Source of the DNA: Octopus bimaculoides
Taxonomy: Eukaryota
DNA: 62,667 bases
NCBI RefSeq assembly: GCF_001194135.2
Contig: NC_068984.1
Span: forward strand, 31,058,724-31,121,390
Direction: 5' to 3'
Position 1 is the first letter of the stretch, and every line of letters starts with the position of its first letter. The notes beneath the pieces were generated by a model. It ran no database searches. It saw only the letters and a list, made by a program, of their open reading frames with translations, and was not told the origin of the DNA. A program made the position numbers and the translations under genes. Of this stretch, positions 8,131-61,000 are shown piece after piece.

Positions 8131-9214
8131 ACCCTTTCATTAAGTTGTAGACAGAAAAAATATGCAGAGTAAAGGATTTCCAAAAGTTATAAGAGAAAAT
8201 ATTTCATTCACAGGTTTCTGTAGCTGAAATGGAATGGAGGTAACTAAGGAATGTTTGTAATCATATAGTTGGGGAATGTTAATCTAATTCTTTCAAGTAC
8301 ACAAAGTGGTAATGACCATAAACAGTCAAGGAAATATAATAATAAATGTATATAAACTTAGTATGAAGTCATCTATTTCTGTATGACATAGTTTTCAGCA
8401 CATCTAATTGGTTTAAGTAAAGTTTATCTTTGTAAGAGTGTTGGCAATTCCAAAACAGAAACTAAGATTATATTATAGAAATTAATCTCATTCTTTGCTT
8501 TAAGTAAATATGATAATATATATATAAATTCAAACCTATATGCATCTCACACACATGTGAACACAAACACACTCACACACACGCATGCATGCACACAACA
8601 TACATGTACACATTTATACAAGGCAAATTGTAGTATGTGACTGATATGTAGGTGCACATATGTATGTGTATATATATGTGTGTGTGTGAGTGTGTTCAAT
8701 AAGAAAATATATATATGTACATACATGTTCTATAAAAGTAATAAATAATCATGAGTATGCATATCTACTATATATAAATACATATATGTGTGTGTGCGTG
8801 TTTGTGTACATATGTGTTTGTGCACATGTGTGTGTGTGTGTGCATGTATTTATATATATCCAAGATGTGTTCGATTTTCGAAGACACTTTCAAAAGCTCT
8901 AACTTTCTTCTAACTTACACTTTTTGTATTTTACTTTCCAAACAAATAATGTCAGACATCAGGTTGACTCAGCAAAGGAAAAGGCACACCGTAGTCATTG
9001 CCTTAAATGCACAGCATTGTGATATAGAGAAAGCTTGCTTCTTGAAAGTTGCTTGGTCTTTCATTGTTAAAGTTTGAAAGGAGTTGGAGGATGCTGATAG
9101 GGATTCAGCATCTGTAGCTGAATGCAGAATACATGCACAAGGTTCTAATACCACCAGAGAACATAACTTTGCACTGAAGTCCAAGAAATAATTAACAAAA
9201 TCCCCCCGAAAGAC

Positions 9215-9431
9215 ATTATTTACATTTGACAGATATTTGTCCTCATCTTGTTTGTTGTTAACACAACATTTCGGCTGATATACTCTCTAGCCTTCATCAG
9301 GTGTGTCGGGTAAATTTCGAAACTGGGTTCCCATTCCTAAGGTATTTTTCGATGTTATCATTATTACTATTATTGTTGTTGTTGTTGTTGTTTGTCTTCT
9401 TCTTCTTCTTCTTTTTCTTCTTCTTCTTCTT

Positions 9432-9462
<31 letters not shown>

Positions 9463-9552
9463 TTATTATTATTATTATTCAGGTCACTGCCTGGAATTGA
9501 ACTCGGAATCTTGGGGTTAGTAGCCTGTGCACTTAACCACTACGCCATATGC
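9215..9552 (-). mobile_element. tRNA-headed SINE-like element carrying a PLE-type hammerhead ribozyme (complete copy)
   Basis: Minus strand: A box TGGCGTAGTGG, B box GAGTTCAATTCC, compound (AAT)/(AAG)/(AAC) tract, linker, HHR, AT-rich tail. Homologous to 49796-49941 and 51895-52370. Confidence 0.8.
9260..9306 (-). ncRNA. Minimal type I hammerhead ribozyme motif (CpG-decayed stem III loop)
   Basis: ACAC-CTGATGA-A-GGCT(AGAGAGTATATC)AGCC-GAAA-TG-TT-GTGT. Stem I ACAC/GTGT and stem II GGCT/AGCC. Confidence 0.7.
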
Positions 9553-11078
9553 AATTAGAGTCATTACAATTAATGTCATTACAAAGACCCTCAAGATTTC
9601 AGAATGCACCATCAGAAGAGCTGTGCATAAGAACATCCAGTACAAGCTGTATATGATGTGGAGGGGTCAGTTTATGCTTGAGGAGTCAGTTTATACTGGA
9701 GAGGTCATTTTATACTGGATGTGACAAAAGAGAATCTTTCAATCCGTGCAAATTGCTTGCTAAACAAGTTAAAATGTCAAGTGGCTGGAATGTTTTCGTT
9801 TTTCTCTGATACTAAAAATTTCACTCAGCGCCAAAGGATAAACTGAAGAAACAACAGATGGTTATGCAGAGACCTGAATGAGGTTTTAACAGTTATGCAT
9901 ACTAAGATACTACCGACTGTGATGGTTCTGTTAGTCATAAATAACAAGTAAGATGTCATGCTTCTTCACTTTTTTTTTTCACAAGAATTAACAGCCAATG
10001 CCACTGTCTACACAGAGGTGCTGGAGAAAGTTGTGAGGCCTTGACTACAAAGTACACAACAGAAGACCATGTCTTACAACAAAACTCTGCACCATCTCAT
10101 AAAGCTAGGACAGCCCAAATATGATCGTGTTCTTCCGGGAACATGGCTTCCTAGCTCACCAGACCTCAATCCACTGCACTATTATTTATGGGATGCAGTC
10201 AAGAAAAGTCAGGCAACACTCCCATAACACCATGCTGTCTCTGAAGCCCACCATCACAAGCACTATGTCAAAAATTTATGAAGATCATCTAAATCGGGCA
10301 GGTCAACACTTTCAACCCTGTACTGCAGTAGCTATTGATGCTAACAGTGGATTAATTAAATATATGCTTGTGTATGAACAGCTATGATACATTGCAGTTA
10401 AATGTAGGCTATGAATGAAAAGATAAGCAAAGACTAGAAAAATATGAAACTAGCATGCACTCTTGATGTGCAATGTCAATAAGCATGTAAAACAAAGCAC
10501 AAATATTTTGAGGTAAAATCTGTTCAAATGTGGAATCAAATGCAATGCGCAAGAGAGAATACTATGCTAGTTTGGTCATGAGATGTACATAGATGCAAAT
10601 AGTTTCATAAGAAAGTAGTGATCACTAAACATGGATAGATATCTGTGGAAGTGGGTAGATCTGCAAAGACATGAGATGGAAGTAATGAAGAGCAATTTCA
10701 AGCTGTTGAGACTCATGGAAGAGACAACAAAGGAGTAAGATGATTGGTGATTTGCTGTACATGAGGAGACTCAACCAATTCAGAACAAATGAGGGCCTAA
10801 AAGCATATGGCTTCTGTCTCATCCATAGCATGTACTATGTACCAAGCTTTCCCTGAAGACATCTTCTTAACAGACATTCTCCCATCAGTCCTCATACTAT
10901 GGTCTTACTTACATAAATGCTGTAATTATATGAGAACAGAAGTGCACATTTCGTTACCCTTTGTGTTACCAGTTATCCTCTCCTTGGGACCACTTCCCTC
11001 ATTTTCAGTATTTACCCATGCCACTATTTTTCTCTGAATGCACTTTTCTCTTAAACACACACACACACACACACACAC

Positions 11079-26659: not shown

Positions 26660-27948
26660 TGAACAGGGATTAATCTTCTATCTTCGCTCCTTTGCACCAC
26701 ATGGGCTCAACTCCCCTCCACTCTTCATCTAACCCCCTCCTCCTGTCTCTCTCCCCCACCCTCACTCCTACCACCCATCTCTCCCCTCCCCCACCACCTG
26801 CTCCGACTCCTACTTCTTTGTATGTCTCTTCACCTCTCTTCACTCCTACTTCTCTTCCTACTTCTCTTCATTCCTACTTCTCTTCCTACTTCTCTTCATT
26901 CCTACTTCNNNNNNNNNNNNNNNNNNNNNNNNNNNNNNNNNNNNNNNNNNNNNNNNNNNNNNNNNNNNNNNNNNNNNNNNNNNNNNNNNNNNNNNNNNNN
27001 NNNNNNNNNNNNNNNNNNNNNNNNNNNNNNNNNNNNNNNNNNNNNNNNNNNNNNNNNNNNNNNNNNNNNNNNNNNNNNNNNNNNNNNNNNNNNNNNNNNN
27101 NNNNNNNNNNNNNNNNNNNNNNNNNNNNNNNNNNNNNNNNNNNNNNNNNNNNNNNNNNNNNNNNNNNNNNNNNNNNNNNNNNNNNNNNNNNNNNNNNNNN
27201 NNNNNNNNNNNNNNNNNNNNNNNNNNNNNNNNNNNNNNNNNNNNNNNNNNNNNNNNNNNNNNNNNNNNNNNNNNNNNNNNNNNNNNNNNNNNNNNNNNNN
27301 NNNNNNNNNNNNNNNNNNNNNNNNNNNNNNNNNNNNNNNNNNNNNNNNNNNNNNNNNNNNNNNNNNNNNNNNNNNNNNNNNNNNNNNNNNNNNNNNNNNN
27401 NNNNNNNNNNNNNNNNNNNNNNNNNNNNNNNNNNNNNNNNNNNNNNNNNNNNNNNNNNNNNNNNNNNNNNNNNNNNNNNNNNNNNNNNNNNNNNNNNNNN
27501 NNNNNNNNNNNNNNNNNNNNNNNNNNNNNNNNNNNNNNNNNNNNNNNNNNNNNNNNNNNNNNNNNNNNNNNNNNNNNNNNNNNNNNNNNNNNNNNNNNNN
27601 NNNNNNNNNNNNNNNNNNNNNNNNNNACGTCAAGATCACCAGCATTCTACCTCCCACACACAGCCCCTCGTTCCCGATCACCGTTTGTTATCTCCCCCTT
27701 TCTTAGCTCTCCTGAAAAAAGAATTTCTAACTTCCGGTCAGCCATTATTATGATTGACCGTTGACTGAACACTATTCAATTTTTTTTCTCCGTGTTTTTC
27801 TCCTTGTCTCCGTATTCTTTCTGTTGAAGAGCGTAGCTCGAAACGTCAAAGACTTTCCGTATTCCCGAGCGTCATACTAATATATCCTTTTGTTATTTAC
27901 ACCACCTGTCCTCGTCTGTTGTTATTATTTGTATATTCTCCCATATAT
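26660..27948 (+). mobile_element. 3' end of a Penelope-like element spanning a gap: GIY-YIG C-terminus, pyrimidine-rich UTR with a 28-bp tandem unit, and terminal HHR
   Basis: EQGLIFYLRSFAPHGLNSPPLFI* at 26661-26732 resembles the PLE ORF terminus (EQ.LIF.L...P.G.N). The CpG-rich terminal segment after the gap carries the HHR motif. Continuity across the gap is inferred. Confidence 0.7.
27816..27852 (+). ncRNA. Minimal hammerhead-like motif with a CUGUUGA core
   Basis: TCTTT-CTGTTGA-A-GAGC(GTA)GCTC-GAAA-CG-TC-AAAGA: 5-bp stem I, 4-bp stem II, GUC triplet, and A6 replaced by U. Confidence 0.7.
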
Positions 27949-28734: not shown

Positions 28735-29190
28735 TTTTTTTCTCATGATAAATTAGAGTTCCTCCAACATTAGCACGCCATCATCTCACTGGCCCAATTT
28801 TTTTTTCTCCCCTTGATATTCACTGGTCGAAGAAGTGGCTTCAATCTGGCTACTCTACCATAGTAACCAAACTTGTAGAGATACCTGACAGCTGTTCTGG
28901 GACTGACATCAATTTGTTCTGCTATGTCAGAGGCCTTGCAATGAAGATTGTCCTCCATACATCACTTAACAAAGCAAAGAGTCCTGCCAGAGGGCCCTGG
29001 TTGACCTGGACAAGGTGATGTGAACTCCTTCCCTTCTCTAGTGAATTTCACAACCACTCTATTAACTGTAGAAAGTGGGATCCCAATGTTTTCTGTGATT
29101 TTATGCTGATGAAGTCCACCTTTAGATTGATACACAATACAGCCTGTTTGAAATTTAGACAGTTCCAAGGCTTCTTTTGTATGTGGCAGG
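28735..29190 (-). mobile_element. Tc1 transposase N-terminal remnant (internally deleted)
   Basis: [11 protein letters not shown]...[15 protein letters not shown] (HTH) and DIAEQIDVSPRTAVRYLYKFGYYGRVARLKPLLRPVN (Tc3-type second HTH and KPLL motif), with an in-frame stop between them. Confidence 0.85.
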
Positions 29191-29221
29191 ATTAAACAGT
29201 CGTATATGGAACCTGAAACAT

Positions 29222-29457
29222 AAAAATGTCCATCATCATCATCATCGTTTAACGTCCTCTTTCCATGCTAGCATGGGTTGGACGATTTGACTGAGGACTG
29301 GTGAAACCGGATGGCAACACCAGGCTCCAATCTAGTTTGGCAGAGTTTCTACAGCTGGATGCCCTTCCTAACGCCAACCACTCAGAGAGTGTAGTGGGTG
29401 CTTTTACGTGTCACCCGCACGAAGGCCAGTCAGGCGGTACTGGCAACGGCCACGCTC
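29222..29457 (-). mobile_element. Young copy of the RTE-tailed short repeat
   Basis: CATCATCATCGTTTAACGTCC...GGCAACGGCCACGC, with CpGs largely intact. Confidence 0.85.
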
Positions 29458-30648: not shown

Positions 30649-33065
30649 NNNNNNNNNNNNNNNNNNNNNNNNNNNNNNNNNNNNNNNNNNNNNNNNNNNN
30701 NNNNNNNNNNNNNNNNNNNNNNNNNNNNNNNNNNNNNNNNNNNNNNNNNNNNNNNNNNNNNNNNNNNNNNNNNNNNNNNNNNNNNNNNNNNNNNNNNNNN
30801 NNNNNNNNNNNNNNNNNNNNNNNNNNNNNNNNNNNNNNNNNNNNNNNNNNNNNNNNNNNNNNNNNNNNNNNNNNNNNNNNNNNNNNNNNNNNNNNNNNNN
30901 NNNNNNNNNNNNNNNNNNNNNNNNNNNNNNNNNNNNNNNNNNNNNNNNNNNNNNNNNNNNNNNNNNNNNNNNNNNNNNNNNNNNNNNNNNNNNNNNNNNN
31001 NNNNNNNNNNNNNNNNNNNNNNNNNNNNNNNNNNNNNNNNNNNNNNNNNNNNNNNNNNNNNNNNNNNNNNNNNNNNNNNNNNNNNNNNNNNNNNNNNNNN
31101 NNNNNNNNNNNNNNNNNNNNNNNNNNNNNNNNNNNNNNNNNNNNNNNNNNNNNNNNNNNNNNNNNNNNNNNNNNNNNNNNNNNNNNNNNNNNNNNNNNNN
31201 NNNNNNNNNNNNNNNNNNNNNNNNNNNNNNNNNNNNNNNNNNNNNNNNNNNNNNNNNNNNNNNNNNNNNNNNNNNNNNNNNNNNNNNNNNNNNNNNNNNN
31301 NNNNNNNNNNNNNNNNNNNNNNNNNNNNNNNNNNNNNNNNNNNNNNNNNNNNNNNNNNNNNNNNNNNNNNNNNNNNNNNNNNNNNNNNNNNNNNNNNNNN
31401 NNNNNNNNNNNNNNNNNNNNNNNNNNNNNNNNNNNNNNNNNNNNNNNNNNNNNNNNNNNNNNNNNNNNNNNNNNNNNNNNNNNNNNNNNNNNNNNNNNNN
31501 NNNNNNNNNNNNNNNNNNNNNNNNNNNNNNNNNNNNNNNNNNNNNNNNNNNNNNNNNNNNNNNNNNNNNNNNNNNNNNNNNNNNNNNNNNNNNNNNNNNN
31601 NTTTATACGCTCATATAATATGTATGTATTTGCCTGTCTGTATGTCTAAATATGTGTTTGCATGTATCTATGTGTTGGTTAGTATGCATGTATGTGTGTG
31701 TGTGTATGTGTATGGGTAGATATGCTTATATGTGATATGTATGTACATTTGTACTTGTGCAAGTCTACATGTGCATTAGTGTATGTATTGATGTGTGCAT
31801 GTATGTGTGTGTGTGTGTGTGTCTGTGTCTGTGCGTGTGTGTATAAGACACTCGTGTCATGAGTTATGATCTACATTGTAATCCATACAGTGAATTTTAA
31901 GGGCACAAATTTCACACACACCACACACACATACACATTTATATATTTTGCCCCTAAATTCATATTAAGCATTGATTTCAAATAACGTCAGATTTTAATG
32001 TCAAGTGGTAATATGGGACACATACTGATTATTTCTTTGTGTATGCACNNNNNNNNNNNNNNNNNNNNNNNNNNNNNNNNNNNNNNNNNNNNNNNNNNNN
32101 NNNNNNNNNNNNNNNNNNNNNNNNNNNNNNNNNNNNNNNNNNNNNNNNNNNNNNNNNNNNNNNNNNNNNNNNNNNNNNNNNNNNNNNNNNNNNNNNNNNN
32201 NNNNNNNNNNNNNNNNNNNNNNNNNNNNNNNNNNNNNNNNNNNNNNNNNNNNNNNNNNNNNNNNNNNNNNNNNNNNNNNNNNNNNNNNNNNNNNNNNNNN
32301 NNNNNNNNNNNNNNNNNNNNNNNNNNNNNNNNNNNNNNNNNNNNNNNNNNNNNNNNNNNNNNNNNNNNNNNNNNNNNNNNNNNNNNNNNNNNNNNNNNNN
32401 NNNNNNNNNNNNNNNNNNNNNNNNNNNNNNNNNNNNNNNNNNNNNNNNNNNNNNNNNNNNNNNNNNNNNNNNNNNNNNNNNNNNNNNNNNNNNNNNNNNN
32501 NNNNNNNNNNNNNNNNNNNNNNNNNNNNNNNNNNNNNNNNNNNNNNNNNNNNNNNNNNNNNNNNNNNNNNNNNNNNNNNNNNNNNNNNNNNNNNNNNNNN
32601 NNNNNNNNNNNNNNNNNNNNNNNNNNNNNNNNNNNNNNNNNNNNNNNNNNNNNNNNNNNNNNNNNNNNNNNNNNNNNNNNNNNNNNNNNNNNNNNNNNNN
32701 NNNNNNNNNNNNNNNNNNNNNNNNNNNNNNNNNNNNNNNNNNNNNNNNNNNNNNNNNNNNNNNNNNNNNNNNNNNNNNNNNNNNNNNNNNNNNNNNNNTA
32801 ATGTCAAGTGGTAATATGGGACACATACTGATTATTTCTTTGTGTATGCACGTGTGTGTGGCTCACTCTGCATACACACGTGTGTGTGTGTGTGTGTGAA
32901 TATGCATGTATATGTGTGTGTGTGCTTGCCTGCCTAGCATGTGTATGTGTGCATGTTGTGTTGCAGTAATTTCTGTCATAATACATTGATGAATATAATT
33001 GGGTATTATATTATAAATGAAGCTCTTATAACAAACATAAGTAAGAAACGTTTTATTAGTGCACA

Positions 33066-52940: not shown

Positions 52941-53685
52941 CTTCTGTCCATACCTTCCTGAATTATCTCGAAATACTGAGCTTCTGTTTCTTGCACAGCC
53001 TTTTTGATACTCCTATCCATTTTGCTACAGCGTTCAAAAATTGATCCTTGAAATATTGATATTTAATGTGCAGATTTCCTTGAATTTCTGTAAATTTTTT
53101 TTATTAAACGCTTTGAAGATGTTGGATCATTTAAATATCATGAATATGTCATATTCCTTGGAAAGATTTCATTGATTTTTCATTTTGTTTCTTACTGTTC
53201 TAGAAGATGATATTGTATTAGTGATGTCACTGGTGGTTTCAAGATTTTGTTTCCTTTTAACATATGAGGCTTTACATAAATGGCCATTTCAAGTTATTGG
53301 TTTGAAACGAATATTTTCCTCGTGATTAGAAATGTTTTTCTTTCTTTTATGATTTCATTGTAATAGTTTTATTTAGCTTCAAGTATTACTACATTCCTGG
53401 AGTGAGGCCAGGAAATTGGAGTGCACAATATTGATATTCAGATATCTATCATTTCTTTCGACACTTGTATCATTCACCAAAACACCCACCACTACCTATA
53501 TGAAATCCATAACATTATGAAAGACAAAATATGTATTAAAGCTTTGTATGATGGATCTAGAGGATATTATGAAAGTAATTCCATTGGCTTGGTACATTCT
53601 TAATGTTGTTTCAGAAGAAATAAAAAAGAAAACAGGAAAGGAAGAAAAAGCAAAGAACAAATTTCTTCTTCTTCTTCTTCTTCTT

Positions 53686-53757
<72 letters not shown>

Positions 53758-53776
53758 TTTTATTATTATTATTATT

Positions 53777-56690
53777 TTCATTAGCATCTTCTTTCAATCC
53801 TGTTTCCATTTCTTGCTGAATATCTTCATGACACTTAGAGCAGAGAAACGTACTGTATACATTGGTAGGGGGAAAAAAAGAAAGAAAATTCACAGCGGAA
53901 ATGCTCTTCCAATACATACCAGTAGACACTCTTTTGCACTTCCTTCATGGATGGTAAGCCAGGGACCATTCTTAAATAATTCTCAGTTCCTTTTTTGATC
54001 ATTCCAAGTGTTTCTACAATCACTGGTGCTGTAACAGGCTTTAGATGCCACATCTTTTCGATTTCGATTTGCAAATCTTTATATTTTCTGAGCTTATCAA
54101 ATTATTTTGCTGAGATATTATGGTCACAGAGTATGCTCATGCCACACAACAATATCTGGTTGATTTGCTTTGATGGTCTGGTCTGTACATACTGGGAAAT
54201 CCCAAAGAATAGTTATATTTTCTCCCTCAGTTACAGCCTCAGGTTAGTGCTTGCACCATTTGTCAGCAGTTTTGATTTTATAATGCTGACACATTATCCA
54301 ATATAGATATTAGCCAACTCTGTCATGTCTTGATTTGTACTACACAGGTGCTAAAACCTTACATCCAGAGATTAGGTGGTCTACTGTTTCTATCCCATTG
54401 TTGCAGTATCAGCACTTTGGGTCTATACCATTTTTCATTACATTGGCTTGATAGTTCTGGGTCAATAAGCTCTGATCTTGGGCAGCCAGGAGAAAGCCTT
54501 TACTCTCTGCTTTTAGCCCTGAACTCCATAGCCACTGATGAGTGTGCTTCTGGCCAACATCAGCTTGTTTGCTACAGACCACATATTTGCCAAGCAGAGG
54601 GTTTTGTTCCTACCTATCAGCCAATTATTCAAATGCATTTTGCTTTGCTATTGAGTTCACTTTCTTTTGTGACTACAGTTGCTGCACTTTCCTCATGCTG
54701 TTCAACTTGGGTATTTTGCATAATGTTTTGCACTCTTTCATAACAGAATGAAGCTTCTTACATCTTCCATGGTTTTCAACGAGCTTTAGCATCCAGGCAC
54801 TAGATGTTTCAAGATATTTTGCCAGTCCAATTGTGGTGGTTTTGTAAGAGATTTCAAATTGGATCAAGCCTCGACTCCTTCAGCTCTGGGGAGGTAAAGA
54901 CGATCTGTGTCTCCCTTTGAGTGGTGCATTTCATTGAAAGTCAGCAGCTTATGGATTTTTTGTCAATCATCCTTATTTCGCTCATATTGCAGTTCAACAC
55001 GTTGAACTGTAAATAACAACTGGAATTGTTAAGGAATTTATAGCTGGCACTTTGTAACGTGTATTTAACTCAGATTTTAGGACTGCACAAACTCTCCTGT
55101 AACACTTCTGCCTGATCTTCTCTTTATTGCATGTTGAATACCAGAGCCCTCATTTATTCCATGATATTTGTAAGTTTGTTCATGCTCAAGTTCTTTTATG
55201 ACTGTCAACATTCAACACCACTGAATTTGAAGTCTTCAGTTTCCCTTTCTGGAAAGTGGTCTTGACACATTTATTCAGACCAAATTCCATCCCGATGTCA
55301 TCACTGAATGCTTTCACAGTTCGTAGTAATCCTTCAAGCTTATTATCGTCTTTGCCATAGAGTTTTAAGTCATCCTTATAAAATATATGACTTATTTTCT
55401 TGTCACCATTTTATATCCATGCCCTTTTCTGTTGAGTTCACTTGTAAGGGGTATCAGGGCTATGCAGAAAATTAAAGGTGAAAGTGAGTCACCTTGGAAA
55501 ATGTTGCAGTTGATATTAATATTTTTTGTGGTTAGTACTCCATTAGATTAGTATAATTGGAGGTTCGTATTTGACATTGACATGTTGTGCTTCAGTTTGA
55601 AATTACAGGAGAAATTTTGAAGATATCCATCGATTTCAAGATCCATGAATGTGTTATGCTTCTGAAGGCCTTCTTATAATCAATCCATGCAGAATTGAAA
55701 TTTCTGTGTTTGTTATGACAGTTCTCAAGGATCATGTCATTGATTAAGAGTTGGTTGTTGCATCCATATGAACCTTGTCAGCACCATTTTTGTTCAGCGG
55801 GGAAAATATTGTTCTGTTCCATAAATTTGTATGTTGTCTCCACAAGGATGGATGTTAAAACTTTATACATGTTATGGGCTGATAGTTCTGGGGAAATTTG
55901 GTTTCATTATTCTTTGGGAGTAGGTAAATAATAACTCTTGCTAACCAATCAGGTTTTTCATAGGATCTCTCATTAAATAACTGGACTACCTTTTTGTGCG
56001 CACACAGGAGTGAAGCAAGCCAGAAATTTGGCACCCTATCATGACCAGAAGATTTCTACTTATGAGCCTTCTTGAGTGTCATCCTTAGGTCTGCTATTGT
56101 AATGTTTTCCCATGCTTGTTCTGGTAAGTTTTGGTAGGATCCTTCTGTGCATCTAATCCAGTCTACATTTTCATTGTAAGTCTTTTCATCACTCCAGATA
56201 TTTTCCCAGAAGTTTTCAACCTCTTCCATGCAGGGACTCTTCAATGGTTATTTTCTCCCTCCCTATTTCTCTGTAGAATGTTTTTGCATTGGATGTGAAC
56301 AGTTTATTTTGCTTGTAAAATTTGTTTCTCTTCTCAAATATTTGTATTCTTTGAGATTTTACTTGGATTTTTGCTGCAATATTTCTTTTGCTGAAAGTTC
56401 TTCTCTTGGTGAGAGTCTATGTTTTCTATTCCTCATTCTTCTTTTCTGGTTTTTACATCATTTCCACAGATTAGATCATTCAATATTGATATTTCACCTC
56501 TCATTATTTCAATCAGTTTTTCAATTTTACTTTTCCAGGTTGGAATTCTTCTCCGGTTTGCATTTTTTTGTTTTTTCAGAGGCATACAATTATCTTAGCG
56601 GCTGTATAAATAATTTCATTTAATTCAGTGAGATCTGGTTTTAGTTTTTGTATAATTTCCTTTGTTACATAGTTTCCAATTTGTTACAGT
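53777..56690 (-). mobile_element. 5'-truncated, frameshifted R4/Dong-clade RLE LINE (RT plus restriction-like endonuclease)
   Basis: EEVENFWENIWSDEK, KISHIFYKDDLKLYGKDD (RT), TILWDFPV.TD.TIKANQPDIVV (RLE) and QIEIEKMWHLKPVTAPVIVETLGMIKKGTENYL. The 3' end runs into (TAA)n/(AAG)n. Confidence 0.92.
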
Positions 56691-56973
56691 CACTTGCCGA
56701 GACAAACCCAGCATCCTGGGGCAAGTGAAGGATAAAAGATATTACATTATGACGGAAAGCTTGGTGGGGGGAGAGGTATTCATGTAATATAATCATGTAA
56801 TACGACATAGACATTTAAATGGATAGGGTTTTTCTAAGGATGTGGGCAGTGCTTGTCGGCACAATCCTTTGGATTTCTCTGAGACCTGGTTCTCTTGGGA
56901 TCTTATCTAGATGTTTCTGACATCCCTTCCTTATCTTACCTAGGTCACCTGCAATAACAGGAACAGTTCTCAT
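56690..56973 (-). mobile_element. Short R4/Dong 3' fragment directly upstream of the long copy
   Basis: RTVPVIAGDLGKIRKGCQKHLDKIPREPGLREIQRIVPTSTAHILRKTLSI* plus 3' UTR, beginning right after (TAA)n. Confidence 0.85.
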
Positions 56974-57008
56974 TATTATTATTATTGTTGTTGTTGTTGT
57001 GGTTGCTG

Positions 57009-57039
<31 letters not shown>

Positions 57040-57293
57040 CATTTAAGACAAAGCATTTTGCATGCTGGGACAAACATTTAGAGGTATTTTGTGTCATTAT
57101 GTTCTGTGTTCAAGATAGACTCTGCCTTTCATCTTTTTGAGGTCAAAGAATCAAGTACAAGTTAAGACAGGGGTTGATGTGATTGATTATCCTGCTTCCC
57201 TCAAATTCCAGGCCTTGTGCCTATATTGGAAAGGATCATTATTGTTGTTGTTGCTTTTATTGTTGTTGTTATTATTATTATTATTATTATTAT

Positions 57294-58019: not shown

Positions 58020-58760
58020 TTAGACAACTTCAGTACATACAATATTTCTTGTTAGACTCTGTATATCATGATGGTCCTGACGTCTTGGATTTGAATTGCA
58101 ATTGAGGAACTCATTTTGGTGAGCAATAATTCTAATCTTGTCTGGGTTTCCAACCCTGCTTATAGCAATATATAATTAACCGTGAGTGAAACTTGGATTT
58201 GGTAAGTAAATGCCACATTTTGACGGACTCTATCCTTGGCTTTTGTTTATGGAAATTGCAAAAGCTGATCTTATTAGAAATTTAAGTTTTGTAGTGTGAA
58301 GGGTAAGTTAGAATCAGAAGGCCTTAAACTGATCCGAGGAATCAGAACAATTTGTCCGACATCAACTCCAATCAATTTTTTTGCAGTTACAATTTTATAC
58401 CTTGTGCTGTTATAATGACCGTTTTTGTGATCAAGATTTCTGAGTAACATTATTGGTGCTCCAATTTTTGATTTAATCTTATGCAGAGGAAGATCACTGA
58501 TAGAAATTCTTCTCTTCGTTCCTGTGATACATTTTCTGGGGCTGCACGATGTTGTTGAGCATCTTGATGTAGAATTTCTTCTCTTCTTCCCTATGATAAA
58601 TTTTCTCGGGCTGCATGACGTTGTTGAGCATTTTGGTGCAAAATTTCTCCTCTCCTTTCCTGTGATATATGTTCTCTTGCTATTTTATATTGTTGAGAGT
58701 CCTGTAGTCAAATTTCCGAGCTTCGTGCTTGACTTAAGTTAGCCCATGCTTCTCTCTATC
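58020..58760 (-). mobile_element. Internally deleted Helitron: 23-aa N-terminal repeats fused to the PIF1-like helicase C-terminus
   Basis: LPLHKIKSKIGAPIMLLRNLD..NGHYNSTRY ... IVLIPRISLRPSDSNLPFTL / AFAISINKSQG*S..KCGIYLPNPSFTHG*LYIAISRV. Upstream there are 3-4 copies of a 69-bp unit. Confidence 0.9.
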
Positions 58761-59719: not shown

Positions 59720-61000
59720 TTTTTCTATTTTACCCTGTCCCTGAATGTATGTGTATGTATGTTGCATAAATCTCACCTTAAAAACATCGTTTATTATGCC
59801 TCATTTTTGTAATGTCATTGGATAATATGCAATCACAGATTATGAATGGTGGAATTTTCAACATCATAGATTAGAGCATGGGATGTAGTCTGTATGGGTG
59901 CATTTTGTTTCTGTTGTAGTGATCTTAGAAGCAATATTATTTAAGCGGGAGTAGATCTCTTTAACGTTGTGGAAATTAAAACATTTTTGATAGTTGTTAG
60001 GTGCTTGAGAACAACTTTCCAATAAAGAAGCAGAATGCTTCTAGGCACATTAGTGGTTACAGCTAAATTTGATAAAAGATTGACTCAGATTACTTTTTTT
60101 CTATATCTCAAGTTTGAGGTAGGAATTTTGCCATATACACCAAATTGTTAGTAAAACTGTTCTTGGTTGTGCCTCATTATAATGTCCATTGATATACTGG
60201 TGATTCTTTTGCTGTTGCCTGTGACTAGATATCTAATTATAGTCTGGAAGTGGTTGGAATTCATGTGGATGAAAATTTCTTTTGGAATAGCATTTGTCTC
60301 AGTGTCTAGGATAACATACAGGTAGTAGACCATTGTTAAGTTGGTGGCCACAATTATACTGAGGCTGAATTCGTTAAAAATACTTCTAAGATGCTTTCTA
60401 AACTTTTCGATCTCTTGGCTGCTTGTATGGCTTGAGATTGCCAAGCCATCATCCTTACGCTACATGAAAGTTTGCTGGAGGGTAAGATCTTTTGTGCCCC
60501 CAAAATAGATAACCCAATGAGATCAATGACATTGGCTCAGTCATAACTTCATAAAGTGGGTTTCCTTCTATCCTATTTTCATACAGTTCAATCCACCGTA
60601 AAGAAGAAGTGACTTCTTAGCATTCGTGGTTATTCTAATATTGAAGTCACTGATTCTAGTAAATTATTTCCTGAAGTTAGGAGCTTTCAGGAAGAGAAAT
60701 TTTTTATAAGAAAGGGATATATTATCATAGTTTTCTAGTTGCATTTCATCCCAGTCTGCTGTATTCAATGTAAAGGTAGTCTTTCTGCAAAAGATTTAGG
60801 GCTTTGCATTCGACAGGCAGTCATTAAGTTTCTTGATTTTCTGTTTTAAGATAATTTAACATCCAACTGAAAATTATTTAAGTATGAAATATTATTGGGA
60901 CACTTGAAGTAGAAACACCTATAACCTTGTGTTTTGCATCTATATCTGATTTCAGCATCTAATGAAGTTTAAGAACACTAGACAGAATTACCTTAGAGTT
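59720..61000 (-). mobile_element. Decayed Penelope-like element, RT and linker region
   Basis: ISDFNIRITTNAKKSLL, SYD*ANVIDLIGLSIL, (R)KDDGLAISSHTS (YRDDGL motif) and FIHMNSNH, in the expected PLE order. Confidence 0.8.

What the first reader, a model, noticed from the sequence alone, without database searches (positions are those of the whole stretch)
9215..9552. tRNA-headed SINE-like element carrying a Penelope-type hammerhead ribozyme
Seen: a ~300-nt non-coding unit made of a tRNA-like head with A box (TGGCGTAGTGG) and B box (GTTCRATTC), an (AAT)n tract, a linker, a minimal hammerhead (CTGATGA-A-stem II-GAAA-YG-TT-stem I) and a short tail. It recurs at 49796, 51895 and 52070. The sense strand of both HHR-containing copies has no run of four T, so there is no Pol III terminator despite the AT-rich context. 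There is no poly(A) and no obvious TSD. Established: minimal hammerheads with a 1-bp stem III and palindromic loop are typical of PLE pseudo-LTRs and of retrozymes, whereas typical SINEs borrow 3' ends from LINEs. Inference: this is a Pol III-driven, self-cleaving non-autonomous retroelement mobilised by PLE RT/GIY-YIG machinery, i.e. a SINE-retrozyme hybrid. I am not aware of a description of this combination, but have not searched.
Basis: partly seen in the sequence, partly recalled or inferred. Interest (0 to 1): 0.9.

Follow-up and report, generated by a model that had tools for sequence, protein, structure and literature searches.

The report
Octopus SINE carrying a minimal hammerhead motif
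An old, mostly decayed octopus repeat joins a tRNA-type polymerase III promoter head to a tail holding a Penelope-type minimal hammerhead ribozyme motif; it is real but rests on one complete copy, and flatworm SINE-like elements already show the same combination.

Summary
On the minus strand, 9552->9214 is a 339-nt non-coding unit. It has a head with canonical A and B boxes, an (AAT)n(GAA)n(CAA)n tract, a 52-nt linker, a minimal type-I hammerhead (HHR) motif and a 51-nt tail. Three partial copies exist (52068-52333, 51894-52075, 49801-49940).

The HHR motif shows every hallmark published for Penelope-like element (PLE) minimal hammerheads. My descriptor hits only copies A and B in about 175 kb of sequence, against 0.003 hits per shuffled window.

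All three heads in the window are followed by (AAT)n plus the same linker, so head and HHR body form one repeated unit.

Limits:
- Only copy A is complete.
- Copies differ by 9-16%.
- There is no covariation signal (three sequences), no tandem or dimer arrangement, no target-site duplication and no identified partner element.
- The absence of TTTT is not statistically notable.
- I could reach only 30 kb more octopus DNA, and it held no copy.

The PLE-mobilised, self-cleaving SINE reading is therefore plausible but unproven.

The combination is not unprecedented. Schistosoma Sm-alpha and Sj-alpha are tRNA-derived, Pol III-type SINE-like elements with hammerheads. Metazoan retrozymes are already proposed to be PLE-dependent, SINE-like elements.

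Verdict: a new variant of a known kind, of moderate interest.

The parts
9479..9552 (-). Copy A: tRNA-type SINE head with A box (9537-9547, TGGCGTAGTGG) and B box (9493-9504, GAGTTCAATTCC)
   Evidence: Sequence; coordinates. It is the only A+B box pair at tRNA spacing in the window, against 0.06 in shuffles. About 68% similar to the head of an ordinary octopus SINE in L002:5553-5624. ARAGORN detects it only at the 80% threshold.
9357..9478 (-). Copy A: internal microsatellite tract (AAT)7(GAA)~24...(CAA)6(AAT)n
   Evidence: TRF 9395-9461, period 3. The same position is occupied by (AAT)n in B and by (AAT)n(CAA)n in C.
9305..9356 (-). Copy A: 52-nt linker (AACATCGAAAAATACCTTAGGAATGGGAACCCAG...)
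   Evidence: This is the part conserved across all four copies. The nhmmer body profile hits A, B, C and D only.
9261..9304 (-). Copy A: minimal type-I hammerhead motif. Stem I 5' strand 9301-9304, CUGAUGA 9294-9300, bulged A 9293, stem II hairpin 9273-9292, GAAA 9269-9272, UG 9267-9268, U16.1 9266, U17 9265. Predicted cleavage between 9265 and 9264. Stem I 3' strand 9261-9264.
   Evidence: Descriptor hit; coordinates. The hammerhead fold is -7.0 kcal/mol against an MFE of -11.7, because the (AC)n/(GU)n stem I has a competing register.
9214..9264 (-). Copy A: 51-nt tail downstream of the predicted cleavage site, ending ...AAATGTAAATAATG
   Evidence: The 3' boundary is shared by A, B and D, after which the flanks diverge. 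No poly(A) or TSD. The first TTTT lies 15 nt downstream in the flank.
52068..52333 (+). Copy B: head lacking the first ~13 nt, then (AAT)n, linker, intact hammerhead core (52239-52280, cleavage between 52277 and 52278, ACGU palindrome at 15.1-16.1) and tail
   Evidence: The hammerhead fold is -10.1 against an MFE of -10.7.
51894..52075 (-). Copy C: inverted, 5'-truncated head, then (AAT)n(CAA)n and 43 nt of linker; no hammerhead. Abuts B head-to-head, sharing GGGGTTAA (52068-52075).
49801..49940 (-). Copy D: (AAT)6, linker, dead hammerhead (CUGAAAA, 20-nt deletion of the stem I 3' strand) and tail. Preceded by the 5' half of a different octopus SINE (49941-50087).

Best explanation
This is an old family of composite, tRNA-derived SINEs in an Octopus genome.

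How it is built:
- A Pol III head (A and B boxes) of the kind used by ordinary octopus SINEs is joined through an unstable internal (AAT)n microsatellite to a 3' module of about 150 nt.
- That module contains a Penelope-type minimal hammerhead motif followed by a 51-nt tail.
- The 3' module was most probably captured from the 3' end or pseudo-LTR of a Penelope-like element (PLE).

Proposed working, all inferred:
- Pol III starts at the head and reads through the T4-free unit to a terminator in the flank.
- PLE RT/GIY-YIG machinery recognises the PLE-like 3' module and copies the RNA by target-primed reverse transcription. This gives 5'-truncated copies, inverted copies and clustered copies.
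- The hammerhead, if active at all, would act only as an intermolecular dimer through the ACGU/AUGU palindrome. It is more likely a passenger or a recognition feature of the borrowed PLE end than a processing site needed for each round of copying.

Shown here: the anatomy, the repeated unit, and the conformity of the hammerhead motif to the PLE type.

Inferred: transcription, the PLE partner, and cleavage.

In this window only copy A is complete. All copies are 9-16% diverged, so the family looks long inactive here.
For: - Repeated unit: all three heads are followed by (AAT)n plus the same linker, all four bodies start at the same linker base, and there are no solo heads.
- Promoter: perfect A box and near-consensus B box at tRNA spacing, unique in the window. 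The head is related to that of a conventional SINE in O. bimaculoides locus L002.
- Hammerhead: core CUGAUGA...GAAA intact in A and B; bulged nucleotide after A9; G10.1-C11.1; ACGU palindrome in B; H17 = U. The descriptor hits only A and B, with 0.003 hits per shuffled window. These are the features listed for PLE minimal hammerheads in PMC4209133.
- PLE context: a remnant at 60151-60459(-) is homologous to RT+GIY-YIG proteins. PLEs are among the more abundant shared TE families, with expansions in octopus (PMC8967140).
- PLE-like insertion habits: the inverted 5'-truncated copy C abuts B, and B, C and D lie within 2.5 kb. The habits are described in PMC8557442, PMC6765202 and PMC8969392.
- The unit has no poly(A) and no simple-repeat 3' end of the LINE type.
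- The window is Octopus: 84 repeat matches of up to 98% identity to O. bimaculoides CM046617.1.
Against: - There are only two independent loci and one complete copy. No copy was found in 30 kb of another O. bimaculoides region.
- No partner PLE 3' end was found.
- There is no covariation: three sequences, 323 of 500 shuffles as good.
- Stem I is only 3-4 bp. In copy A a competing register is 4.7 kcal/mol more stable.
- No second hammerhead lies in cis to form a dimer.
- Genomic copies keep the 51 nt beyond the cleavage site, so cleavage is not part of making the copied template.
- The absence of TTTT is expected from composition.
- No TSD.
- Rfam hammerhead and tRNA models give nothing at E <= 10.
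- Copy D carries the same body behind a different SINE, and (AAT)n tracts also sit at the 5' junctions of LINE fragments here. Juxtaposition at microsatellites is therefore possible.
Confidence: 0.5

Rival explanations
1. Juxtaposition, not one element. A simple SINE (head plus (AAT)n tail) and a separate short PLE-derived fragment or non-autonomous element ((AAT)n-linker-hammerhead-tail) lie side by side. This would happen because retroelements here insert into, or template-switch at, (AAT)n microsatellites.
For: - Copy D has the same body joined through (AAT)6 to the 5' half of an unrelated octopus SINE.
- The LINE at 56250->53838(-) ends in (AAT)n(GAA)n, the same order as in copy A.
- A 5'-truncated LINE fragment at 57000->56850(-) is also preceded by (AAT)n(CAA)n(AAT)n.
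- PLEs are reported to prefer microsatellite targets, and most minimal hammerheads are dispersed single motifs thought to be truncated PLEs (PMC8557442; PMC4209133).
Against: - All three heads carry the body, and none is solo.
- All four bodies begin at the same linker base, which random 5' truncation of a PLE would not give.
- The 3' flanks are not (AAT)n, so the body is not sitting inside a microsatellite.
Confidence: 0.25
2. An ordinary LINE-dependent SINE. The unit is mobilised by an I/Nimb-like LINE with a (TAA)n-type 3' end, and the hammerhead-like motif is an inert relic or a chance resemblance.
For: - The unit ends in ...AATGTAAATAATG. The LINE in the window ends in ...AATGAAAATAAT(AAT)n, a 12-nt match placed exactly at both 3' termini.
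- The head type is shared with conventional octopus SINEs.
- Minimal hammerheads are barely active in vitro (PMC4209133).
Against: - The 3' similarity is not significant (P = 0.06-0.27 in shuffles).
- The three copies that retain the 3' end (A, B and D) end at the same ATAATG without a variable repeat tail.
Confidence: 0.15
3. A chance motif in a locally duplicated sequence. The copies are segmental duplicates or rearrangement products, not a transposable family, and the hammerhead likeness is coincidental.
For: B, C and D lie within 2.5 kb. There were no copies in 30 kb of another octopus region or in any public collection scanned.
Against: - Copy A is 40 kb away in an unrelated context, beside a DNA-transposon remnant.
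- The flanks of the copies are unrelated to one another.
- Divergence of 9-16% with sharp shared boundaries is typical of dispersed repeats.
- The descriptor gives 0.003 hits per shuffled window.
Confidence: 0.1

Closest known systems
Sm-alpha / Sj-alpha SINE-like retroposons of Schistosoma (Ferbeyre et al. 1998; Laha et al. 2000; as described in PMC2770079, PMC6765202 and PMC8490949)
   Same: A short non-coding interspersed repeat with a tRNA-derived, Pol III-type promoter followed by a type-I hammerhead. It lives in a genome that also holds PLEs with minimal hammerheads.
   Different: Sm-alpha carries a canonical, efficient hammerhead with loop-loop contacts that Rfam recognises, is often in tandem arrays and is found in a flatworm. 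Here the hammerhead is the PLE-type minimal form (1-bp helix III, bulge after A9), the copies are single or inverted, an internal (AAT)n tract separates promoter and ribozyme, and the host is a cephalopod.
Minimal hammerheads of Penelope-like element pseudo-LTRs (Cervera & de la Pena 2014, PMC4209133; Lunse et al. 2017)
   Same: Core, bulged nucleotide between 9 and 10.1, G10.1-C11.1, palindromic 15.2/16.2, short helix I and no helix III hairpin. Many occur as dispersed single motifs.
   Different: Those sit in the terminal repeats of an RT/GIY-YIG-coding element or its truncated remains. This one sits behind a Pol III head with a fixed 5' boundary. Helix II is shorter (4-6 bp against 6-8).
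Metazoan non-LTR retrozymes (Cervera & de la Pena 2020, PMC7229834; PMC7761336; Li et al. 2026 bioRxiv)
   Same: A small (~300 nt), AT-rich, non-coding, hammerhead-bearing non-autonomous element, proposed to depend on PLEs and described as a kind of SINE.
   Different: Retrozymes are tandem repeats with one hammerhead per unit, are expressed as circRNAs, and are stated to lack promoters. This unit is not tandem and has a Pol III promoter.
Composite tRNA-derived SINEs of molluscs with internal microsatellites (Matetovici et al. 2016, PMC4758252) and octopus tRNA-derived SINE families (classed tRNA-Core and tRNA-Deu in PMC8967140)
   Same: Modular head, body and tail build. The head is related to other octopus SINE heads. 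An internal microsatellite has a precedent in the Haliotis MESC SINE with (CA)n.
   Different: Those carry LINE-type tails or terminal simple repeats and no ribozyme motif.

Membership tests
tRNA-derived SINE (SINE2) | Internal Pol III promoter: A box and B box at tRNA spacing | tested here: met
   Copy A has TGGCGTAGTGG and GAGTTCAATTCC about 44 nt apart. This pair is unique in the window, against 0.06 in shuffles. Copies B and C have lost the A box.
tRNA-derived SINE (SINE2) | Head recognisably derived from a tRNA (cloverleaf) | tested here: inconclusive
   ARAGORN finds 0 at default settings and calls the head only at the 80% threshold, with inconsistent anticodons. Rfam tRNA gives no hit at E <= 10. 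The head is about 68% similar to another octopus SINE head.
tRNA-derived SINE (SINE2) | Short, non-coding, dispersed in many copies with shared termini | tested here: inconclusive
   The unit is 339 nt and non-coding. There are four copies at two loci with shared linker-start and 3'-end boundaries. Genome-wide copy number could not be measured, and 30 kb of other octopus DNA held none.
tRNA-derived SINE (SINE2) | Target-site duplications | tested here: not met
   No direct repeat adjoins the ends of A, of the B/C pair or of D. At 9-16% divergence short TSDs could be erased, and PLE insertions often lack clear TSDs (PMC8557442).
tRNA-derived SINE (SINE2) | 3' tail shared with an autonomous partner, or an A-rich or simple-repeat tail | tested here: inconclusive
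   There is no poly(A) or repeat tail. Only a 12-nt, non-significant terminal match to the LINE in the window was found. No PLE 3' end was available to compare.
PLE-type minimal hammerhead | Conserved core C3-A9, G12-A14, A15.1-U16.1 and H17 | tested here: met
   A and B have CUGAUGA...GAAA-NG-U-U. D is mutated to CUGAAAA.
PLE-type minimal hammerhead | Unpaired nucleotide between 9 and 10.1; G10.1-C11.1; palindromic 15.2/16.2; no helix III hairpin; helix I of 4-5 bp | tested here: met
   Bulged A; GGCU/AGCC; ACGU in B and AUGU (wobble) in A; helix I of 4 bp in A and 3 bp in B. Criteria are from PMC4209133.
PLE-type minimal hammerhead | Location in the pseudo-LTR of an RT/GIY-YIG element, or tandem or nearby partner motifs for dimer formation | tested here: not met
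   No ORF adjoins the unit. There is no tandem copy. The nearest second intact motif is 43 kb away, on the other strand. A decayed PLE remnant at 60151-60459 has no hammerhead nearby.
PLE-type minimal hammerhead | Covariation in helices I and II | tested here: inconclusive
   Three sequences, one double change involving the dead copy D, and 323 of 500 shuffles as good.
PLE-type minimal hammerhead | Self-cleavage at H17 (as a dimer) | not testable with these tools
   Needs in vitro transcription of monomer, dimer and trans mixtures.
Hammerhead ribozyme, Rfam type I/III models | Score against the curated covariance models | tested here: not met
   No hammerhead family hit at gathering score in the window or at E <= 10 in 9100-9700. 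This is expected for motifs without a helix III hairpin.
Metazoan non-LTR retrozyme | Head-to-tail tandem repeats of ~170-400 nt, each with a hammerhead | tested here: not met
   No tandem arrangement. B and C are inverted, and C lacks the hammerhead.
Metazoan non-LTR retrozyme | Expression as circular RNA | not testable with these tools
   Needs RNA data.
Sm-alpha-like SINE with hammerhead | tRNA-derived Pol III head plus a canonical type-I hammerhead with helix III and loop-loop contacts | tested here: not met
   The head criterion is met. The hammerhead is the minimal form, and the Rfam Hammerhead models are silent. The resemblance is one of architecture, not of sequence family.

The most novel reading that the evidence does not exclude
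This is the first example of a true SINE (Pol III tRNA-type head) whose 3' module is borrowed from a Penelope-like element rather than a LINE. PLE RT/GIY-YIG enzymes would then have their own Pol III-driven parasites, carrying the PLE minimal hammerhead. The (AAT)n joint, and copy D with a second head type, would show how heads are swapped onto the PLE tail by template switching.
Probability: 0.35. Interest if true: 0.65.

Novelty: new variant of a known kind. Interest (0 to 1): 0.45.

Why it matters
SINEs are defined by their dependence on LINEs. Metazoan retrozymes and the thousands of dispersed minimal hammerheads have no known promoter and no proven mobiliser.

A unit that physically links a Pol III promoter to a PLE-type hammerhead tail would give three things:
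- a concrete candidate for a PLE-dependent SINE;
- a natural construct for testing what PLE hammerheads do (processing, RT recognition or nothing);
- a bridge between the Schistosoma Sm-alpha elements, retrozymes and PLEs.

Octopus genomes are SINE-dominated, so the family can be counted and dated easily once a whole genome is searched.

If head and tail turn out to be merely neighbours at a microsatellite, the finding reduces to an ordinary truncated PLE fragment beside an ordinary SINE.

Tried and rejected
RNA and structure checks:
- Rfam at gathering score on the whole window and at E <= 10 on 9100-9700: no tRNA or hammerhead family.
- ARAGORN: nothing at default settings.
- Covariation count on the three hammerhead copies: uninformative.
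- TSD search: none.
- Paralogous empty sites for the flanks of A, B, C and D in the window and loci: none.
- LINE 3' end against the SINE 3' module: only a 12-nt terminal match, not significant.

Scans of public collections:
- The hammerhead 32-mer against metagenome, viral and prokaryote genome contigs: 0 matches.
- The linker pattern against metagenome contigs: 0 matches.

Attempts to reach more octopus DNA through proteins:
- The element's open antisense frame as a protein query, to catch spurious ORFs: nothing.
- A read-through of the LINE RT: 302 hits, none from octopus.
- Locus L006 from one of those hits shares only LINE similarity with the window.
- Exact look-up of 10 window ORFs, run twice: not in the collection, so I could not walk along the source contig.
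- A chimeric Tc1 + RTE + Pif1 query: one O. bimaculoides protein, giving L002 (30.5 kb). L002 confirmed the host genus but holds no copy.
- ENA loci L001 and L003-L005 are not octopus.

Readings rejected:
- A hammerhead with a long helix III formed by GUUG...CAAC. It would need an A15.1-A16.1 mismatch and leaves no helix I.
- 'Retrozyme' as the name for this element, because there are no tandem units.
- Absence of TTTT as evidence of Pol III adaptation.

Full report
**What is there**

The feature lies on the minus strand. Read 9552->9214, it is a 339-nt non-coding unit with five parts:
- A 74-nt head (9552-9479) with A box TGGCGTAGTGG (9547-9537) and B box GAGTTCAATTCC (9504-9493).
- A 122-nt microsatellite tract, (AAT)7(GAA)~24...(CAA)6(AAT)n (9478-9357; TRF).
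- A 52-nt linker (9356-9305).
- A minimal type-I hammerhead motif (9304-9261): ACAC-CUGAUGA-A-GGCU[AGAGAGUAUAUC]AGCC-GAAA-UG-U-U|GUGU. The predicted cleavage site is between 9265 and 9264.
- A 51-nt tail ending ...AAATGTAAATAATG (9264-9214).

**Is it more than chance?**

An A box followed at tRNA distance by a B box occurs exactly once in the window, at 9547(-). Shuffles give 0.06 with relaxed consensi and 0.0 with strict ones.

I wrote a minimal-hammerhead descriptor with these requirements: CUGANGA, an optional 1-nt bulge, a helix II of at least 4 bp closed by G10.1-C11.1, GAAA, 0-4 nt, U, H, and a helix I of at least 3 bp. It hits only copy A and copy B on both strands of the window, against 0.003 hits per shuffled window. 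It hits nothing in 112 kb of other fetched loci. The descriptor was written after I had seen the motif, so the figure is somewhat optimistic. Even so, the features it checks are those published for Penelope-like element (PLE) hammerheads.

Absence of TTTT in the sense strand is true for A and B. It is expected from the A-rich, T-poor composition (P = 0.76 and 0.53 in shuffles). It is therefore compatible with Pol III read-through but is not evidence for it. Copy A has a TTTT 15 nt beyond its 3' end.

ARAGORN and Rfam do not call the head a tRNA. The head is a SINE-type promoter module rather than a recognisable tRNA.

**The copies**

blastn and nhmmer profiles find three heads and four bodies.
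- Copy B (52068-52333, +) lacks about 13 nt of the head. It has (AAT)n, linker, an intact hammerhead (52239-52280, with a perfect ACGU palindrome at 15.1-16.1) and the tail.
- Copy C (51894-52075, -) is inverted and abuts B head-to-head, sharing GGGGTTAA. It has half a head, (AAT)n(CAA)n and 43 nt of linker, then breaks off before the hammerhead.
- Copy D (49801-49940, -) has (AAT)6, linker, a dead core (CUGAAAA, that is G8A), a 20-nt deletion removing the 3' strand of helix I, and the tail. It is preceded by the 5' half of a different, abundant octopus SINE (49941-50087).

Pairwise divergence outside the microsatellite is 9-16%. I found no TSD for any copy and no paralogous empty site.

**One unit or two neighbours?**

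All three heads are followed by (AAT)n and then the same linker. No head stands alone. All four bodies begin at the same linker base, and the three bodies that reach the 3' end stop at the same ATAATG. Random 5' truncation of a PLE would not give a fixed 5' boundary. The 3' flanks are not (AAT)n, so the body does not sit inside a microsatellite. This favours a composite element with an internal, unstable microsatellite, for which the Haliotis MESC SINE is a precedent (PMC4758252).

Three observations argue the other way:
- B and C may not be independent, so there are in effect two loci.
- Copy D shows the body behind another head.
- (AAT)n tracts also form the 3' end of a LINE (53776-53663) and the 5' junction of a LINE fragment. 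Microsatellite-mediated juxtaposition or template switching is therefore a live rival.

**What kind of hammerhead?**

Cervera & de la Pena (PMC4209133) list features that emerged for PLE minimal hammerheads beyond the search descriptor. [quoted passage not shown] Activity was seen only as dimers and was weak in vitro.

Copies A and B show all of these sequence features. Helix II is 4 bp in A and 6 bp in B. Helix I is 4 bp in A and 3 bp in B.

The hammerhead fold is near the MFE for B (-10.1 against -10.7 kcal/mol). It is disfavoured for A (-7.0 against -11.7) because the (AC)n/(GU)n helix I can slip by one register.

Covariation cannot be judged from three sequences. Rfam hammerhead models are silent, as expected for motifs without a helix III hairpin.

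**Context**

The window is from an Octopus genome:
- A Tc1-like remnant is 66% identical to O. bimaculoides LOC128249697.
- The 30.5-kb locus around that gene (L002, CM046617.1) shares 84 repeat matches of up to 98% identity with the window.
- L002 holds no copy of the body.
- L002 does hold a conventional SINE whose head is about 68% similar to that of copy A, including both boxes. The head is therefore a bona fide octopus SINE head.

A decayed PLE remnant lies at 60151-60459(-). Its homologues carry an RT-like region, a CxC linker and a GIY-YIG domain. The literature reports Penelope among the more abundant shared TE families in cephalopods, with expansions in octopus (PMC8967140).

PLEs are 5'-truncated on insertion, often carry an inverted 5'-truncated copy upstream, and tend to insert next to earlier copies (PMC8557442; PMC6765202; PMC8969392). 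The B/C inverted pair and the B/C/D cluster fit that habit, although C lacks the 3' end that a simple 5'-truncated copy should keep.

**Most likely mechanism (about 0.5)**

I read this as a composite tRNA-type SINE whose 3' module was captured from a PLE 3' end.
- Pol III would start at the head and run through the T4-free unit into the flank.
- PLE RT/EN would recognise the borrowed 3' module.
- The hammerhead is probably a passenger or a recognition feature. All copies keep the 51 nt beyond the cleavage site, so the copied template was uncleaved. No second hammerhead lies in cis, so any cleavage would need trans dimers.

The anatomy and the motif's conformity to type are shown. Transcription, the partner and cleavage are inferred.

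**Rivals**
- Juxtaposition of a simple SINE and a PLE fragment at (AAT)n: 0.25.
- An ordinary LINE-dependent SINE with an inert hammerhead relic: 0.15. The only support is a 12-nt, non-significant match at both 3' termini.
- Local duplication with a chance motif: 0.1.

**Comparison with known systems**

- Sm-alpha and Sj-alpha of Schistosoma are tRNA-derived SINE-like elements, apparently transcribed by Pol III, that carry active hammerheads (PMC2770079; PMC6765202; PMC8490949).
- Metazoan non-LTR retrozymes have been called a kind of SINE and proposed, then argued, to be non-autonomous PLE derivatives (PMC7761336; PMC8969392; bioRxiv 10.64898/2026.07.22.740005).

Two things differ here:
- The hammerhead is the PLE minimal form rather than the canonical Sm-alpha form.
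- It is linked to a Pol III head, whereas retrozymes are said to lack promoters.

The unit is not a retrozyme, because it is not tandem. I found no report of a tRNA-headed SINE with a PLE-type tail in the searched literature. Absence from that library is not proof.

**Limits**

All attempts to reach more octopus DNA gave only 30 kb. Genome-wide co-occurrence, the partner element, covariation and the exact termini remain untested. They are straightforward to test with a whole octopus assembly.

Noticed in passing
window 53663-56250 (- strand): Frameshifted non-LTR (LINE) reverse-transcriptase remnant. Its 3' end runs into (AAT)n(GAA)n (53776-53663), the same repeat order as inside SINE copy A.
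   Followed up: partly
window 60151-60459 (- strand): Decayed Penelope-like element remnant. The 103-aa frame has 54 homologues at E <= 1e-3. The long ones carry an RT-like region, a CxC linker and a GIY-YIG domain. No hammerhead motif lies nearby.
   Followed up: partly
window 49941-50087 (- strand) and 57060-57245 (+ strand): Copies of the abundant octopus SINE (GAGTTCAAATTCCGCCGAGGTC...). The first is cut after about 150 nt and joined through (AAT)6 to hammerhead-body copy D, giving a second head type on the same body.
   Followed up: partly
window 9553-9585 (- strand): A 15-nt tandem duplication (TAATGACATTAATTG / TAATGACTCTAATTG) lies directly upstream of the head of copy A. Unexplained; it might be a PLE-style terminal extension or part of the host transposon.
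   Followed up: no
window 9560-10400 (+ strand): Remnant of a DDE (Tc1/mariner-like) transposase (...WLPSSPDLNPLHYYLWDAVK...) lies immediately beside copy A. It includes a 19-nt x3.2 tandem repeat at 9659-9719.
   Followed up: no
window 28773-29267 (- strand): Tc1-like transposase remnant (HTH region), 66% identical to O. bimaculoides LOC128249697. I used it to reach octopus locus L002.
   Followed up: yes
window 58277-58697 (- strand): Pif1/Helitron-like helicase fragment (Pfam Pif1_2B_dom, E = 8e-10), preceded by a 69-nt tandem repeat (2.6-2.8 copies).
   Followed up: no
window 56850-57045 (- strand): A 5'-truncated LINE C-terminal fragment is preceded by (AAT)n(CAA)n(AAT)n. Trinucleotide tracts therefore mark the 5' junctions of several retroelement fragments in this window, which suggests microsatellite-targeted insertion or template switching.
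   Followed up: no
window, about 13 runs of N (5267 N in total), e.g. 850-1250, 2198-2930, 26910-27620, 32050-32790: Assembly gaps sit next to (TA)n/(TATG)n microsatellites, typical of a short-read scaffold. Gaps at about 50360-50420 and 51360-51770 lie between copies D and C and could hide further copies.
   Followed up: no
L002:5553-5830 (O. bimaculoides CM046617.1): A conventional tRNA-derived SINE whose head resembles that of copy A (both boxes, GAGTTCAATTCC-GGCAGTG) but continues into a different, long body. This shows that the head module is shared between SINE families.
   Followed up: partly
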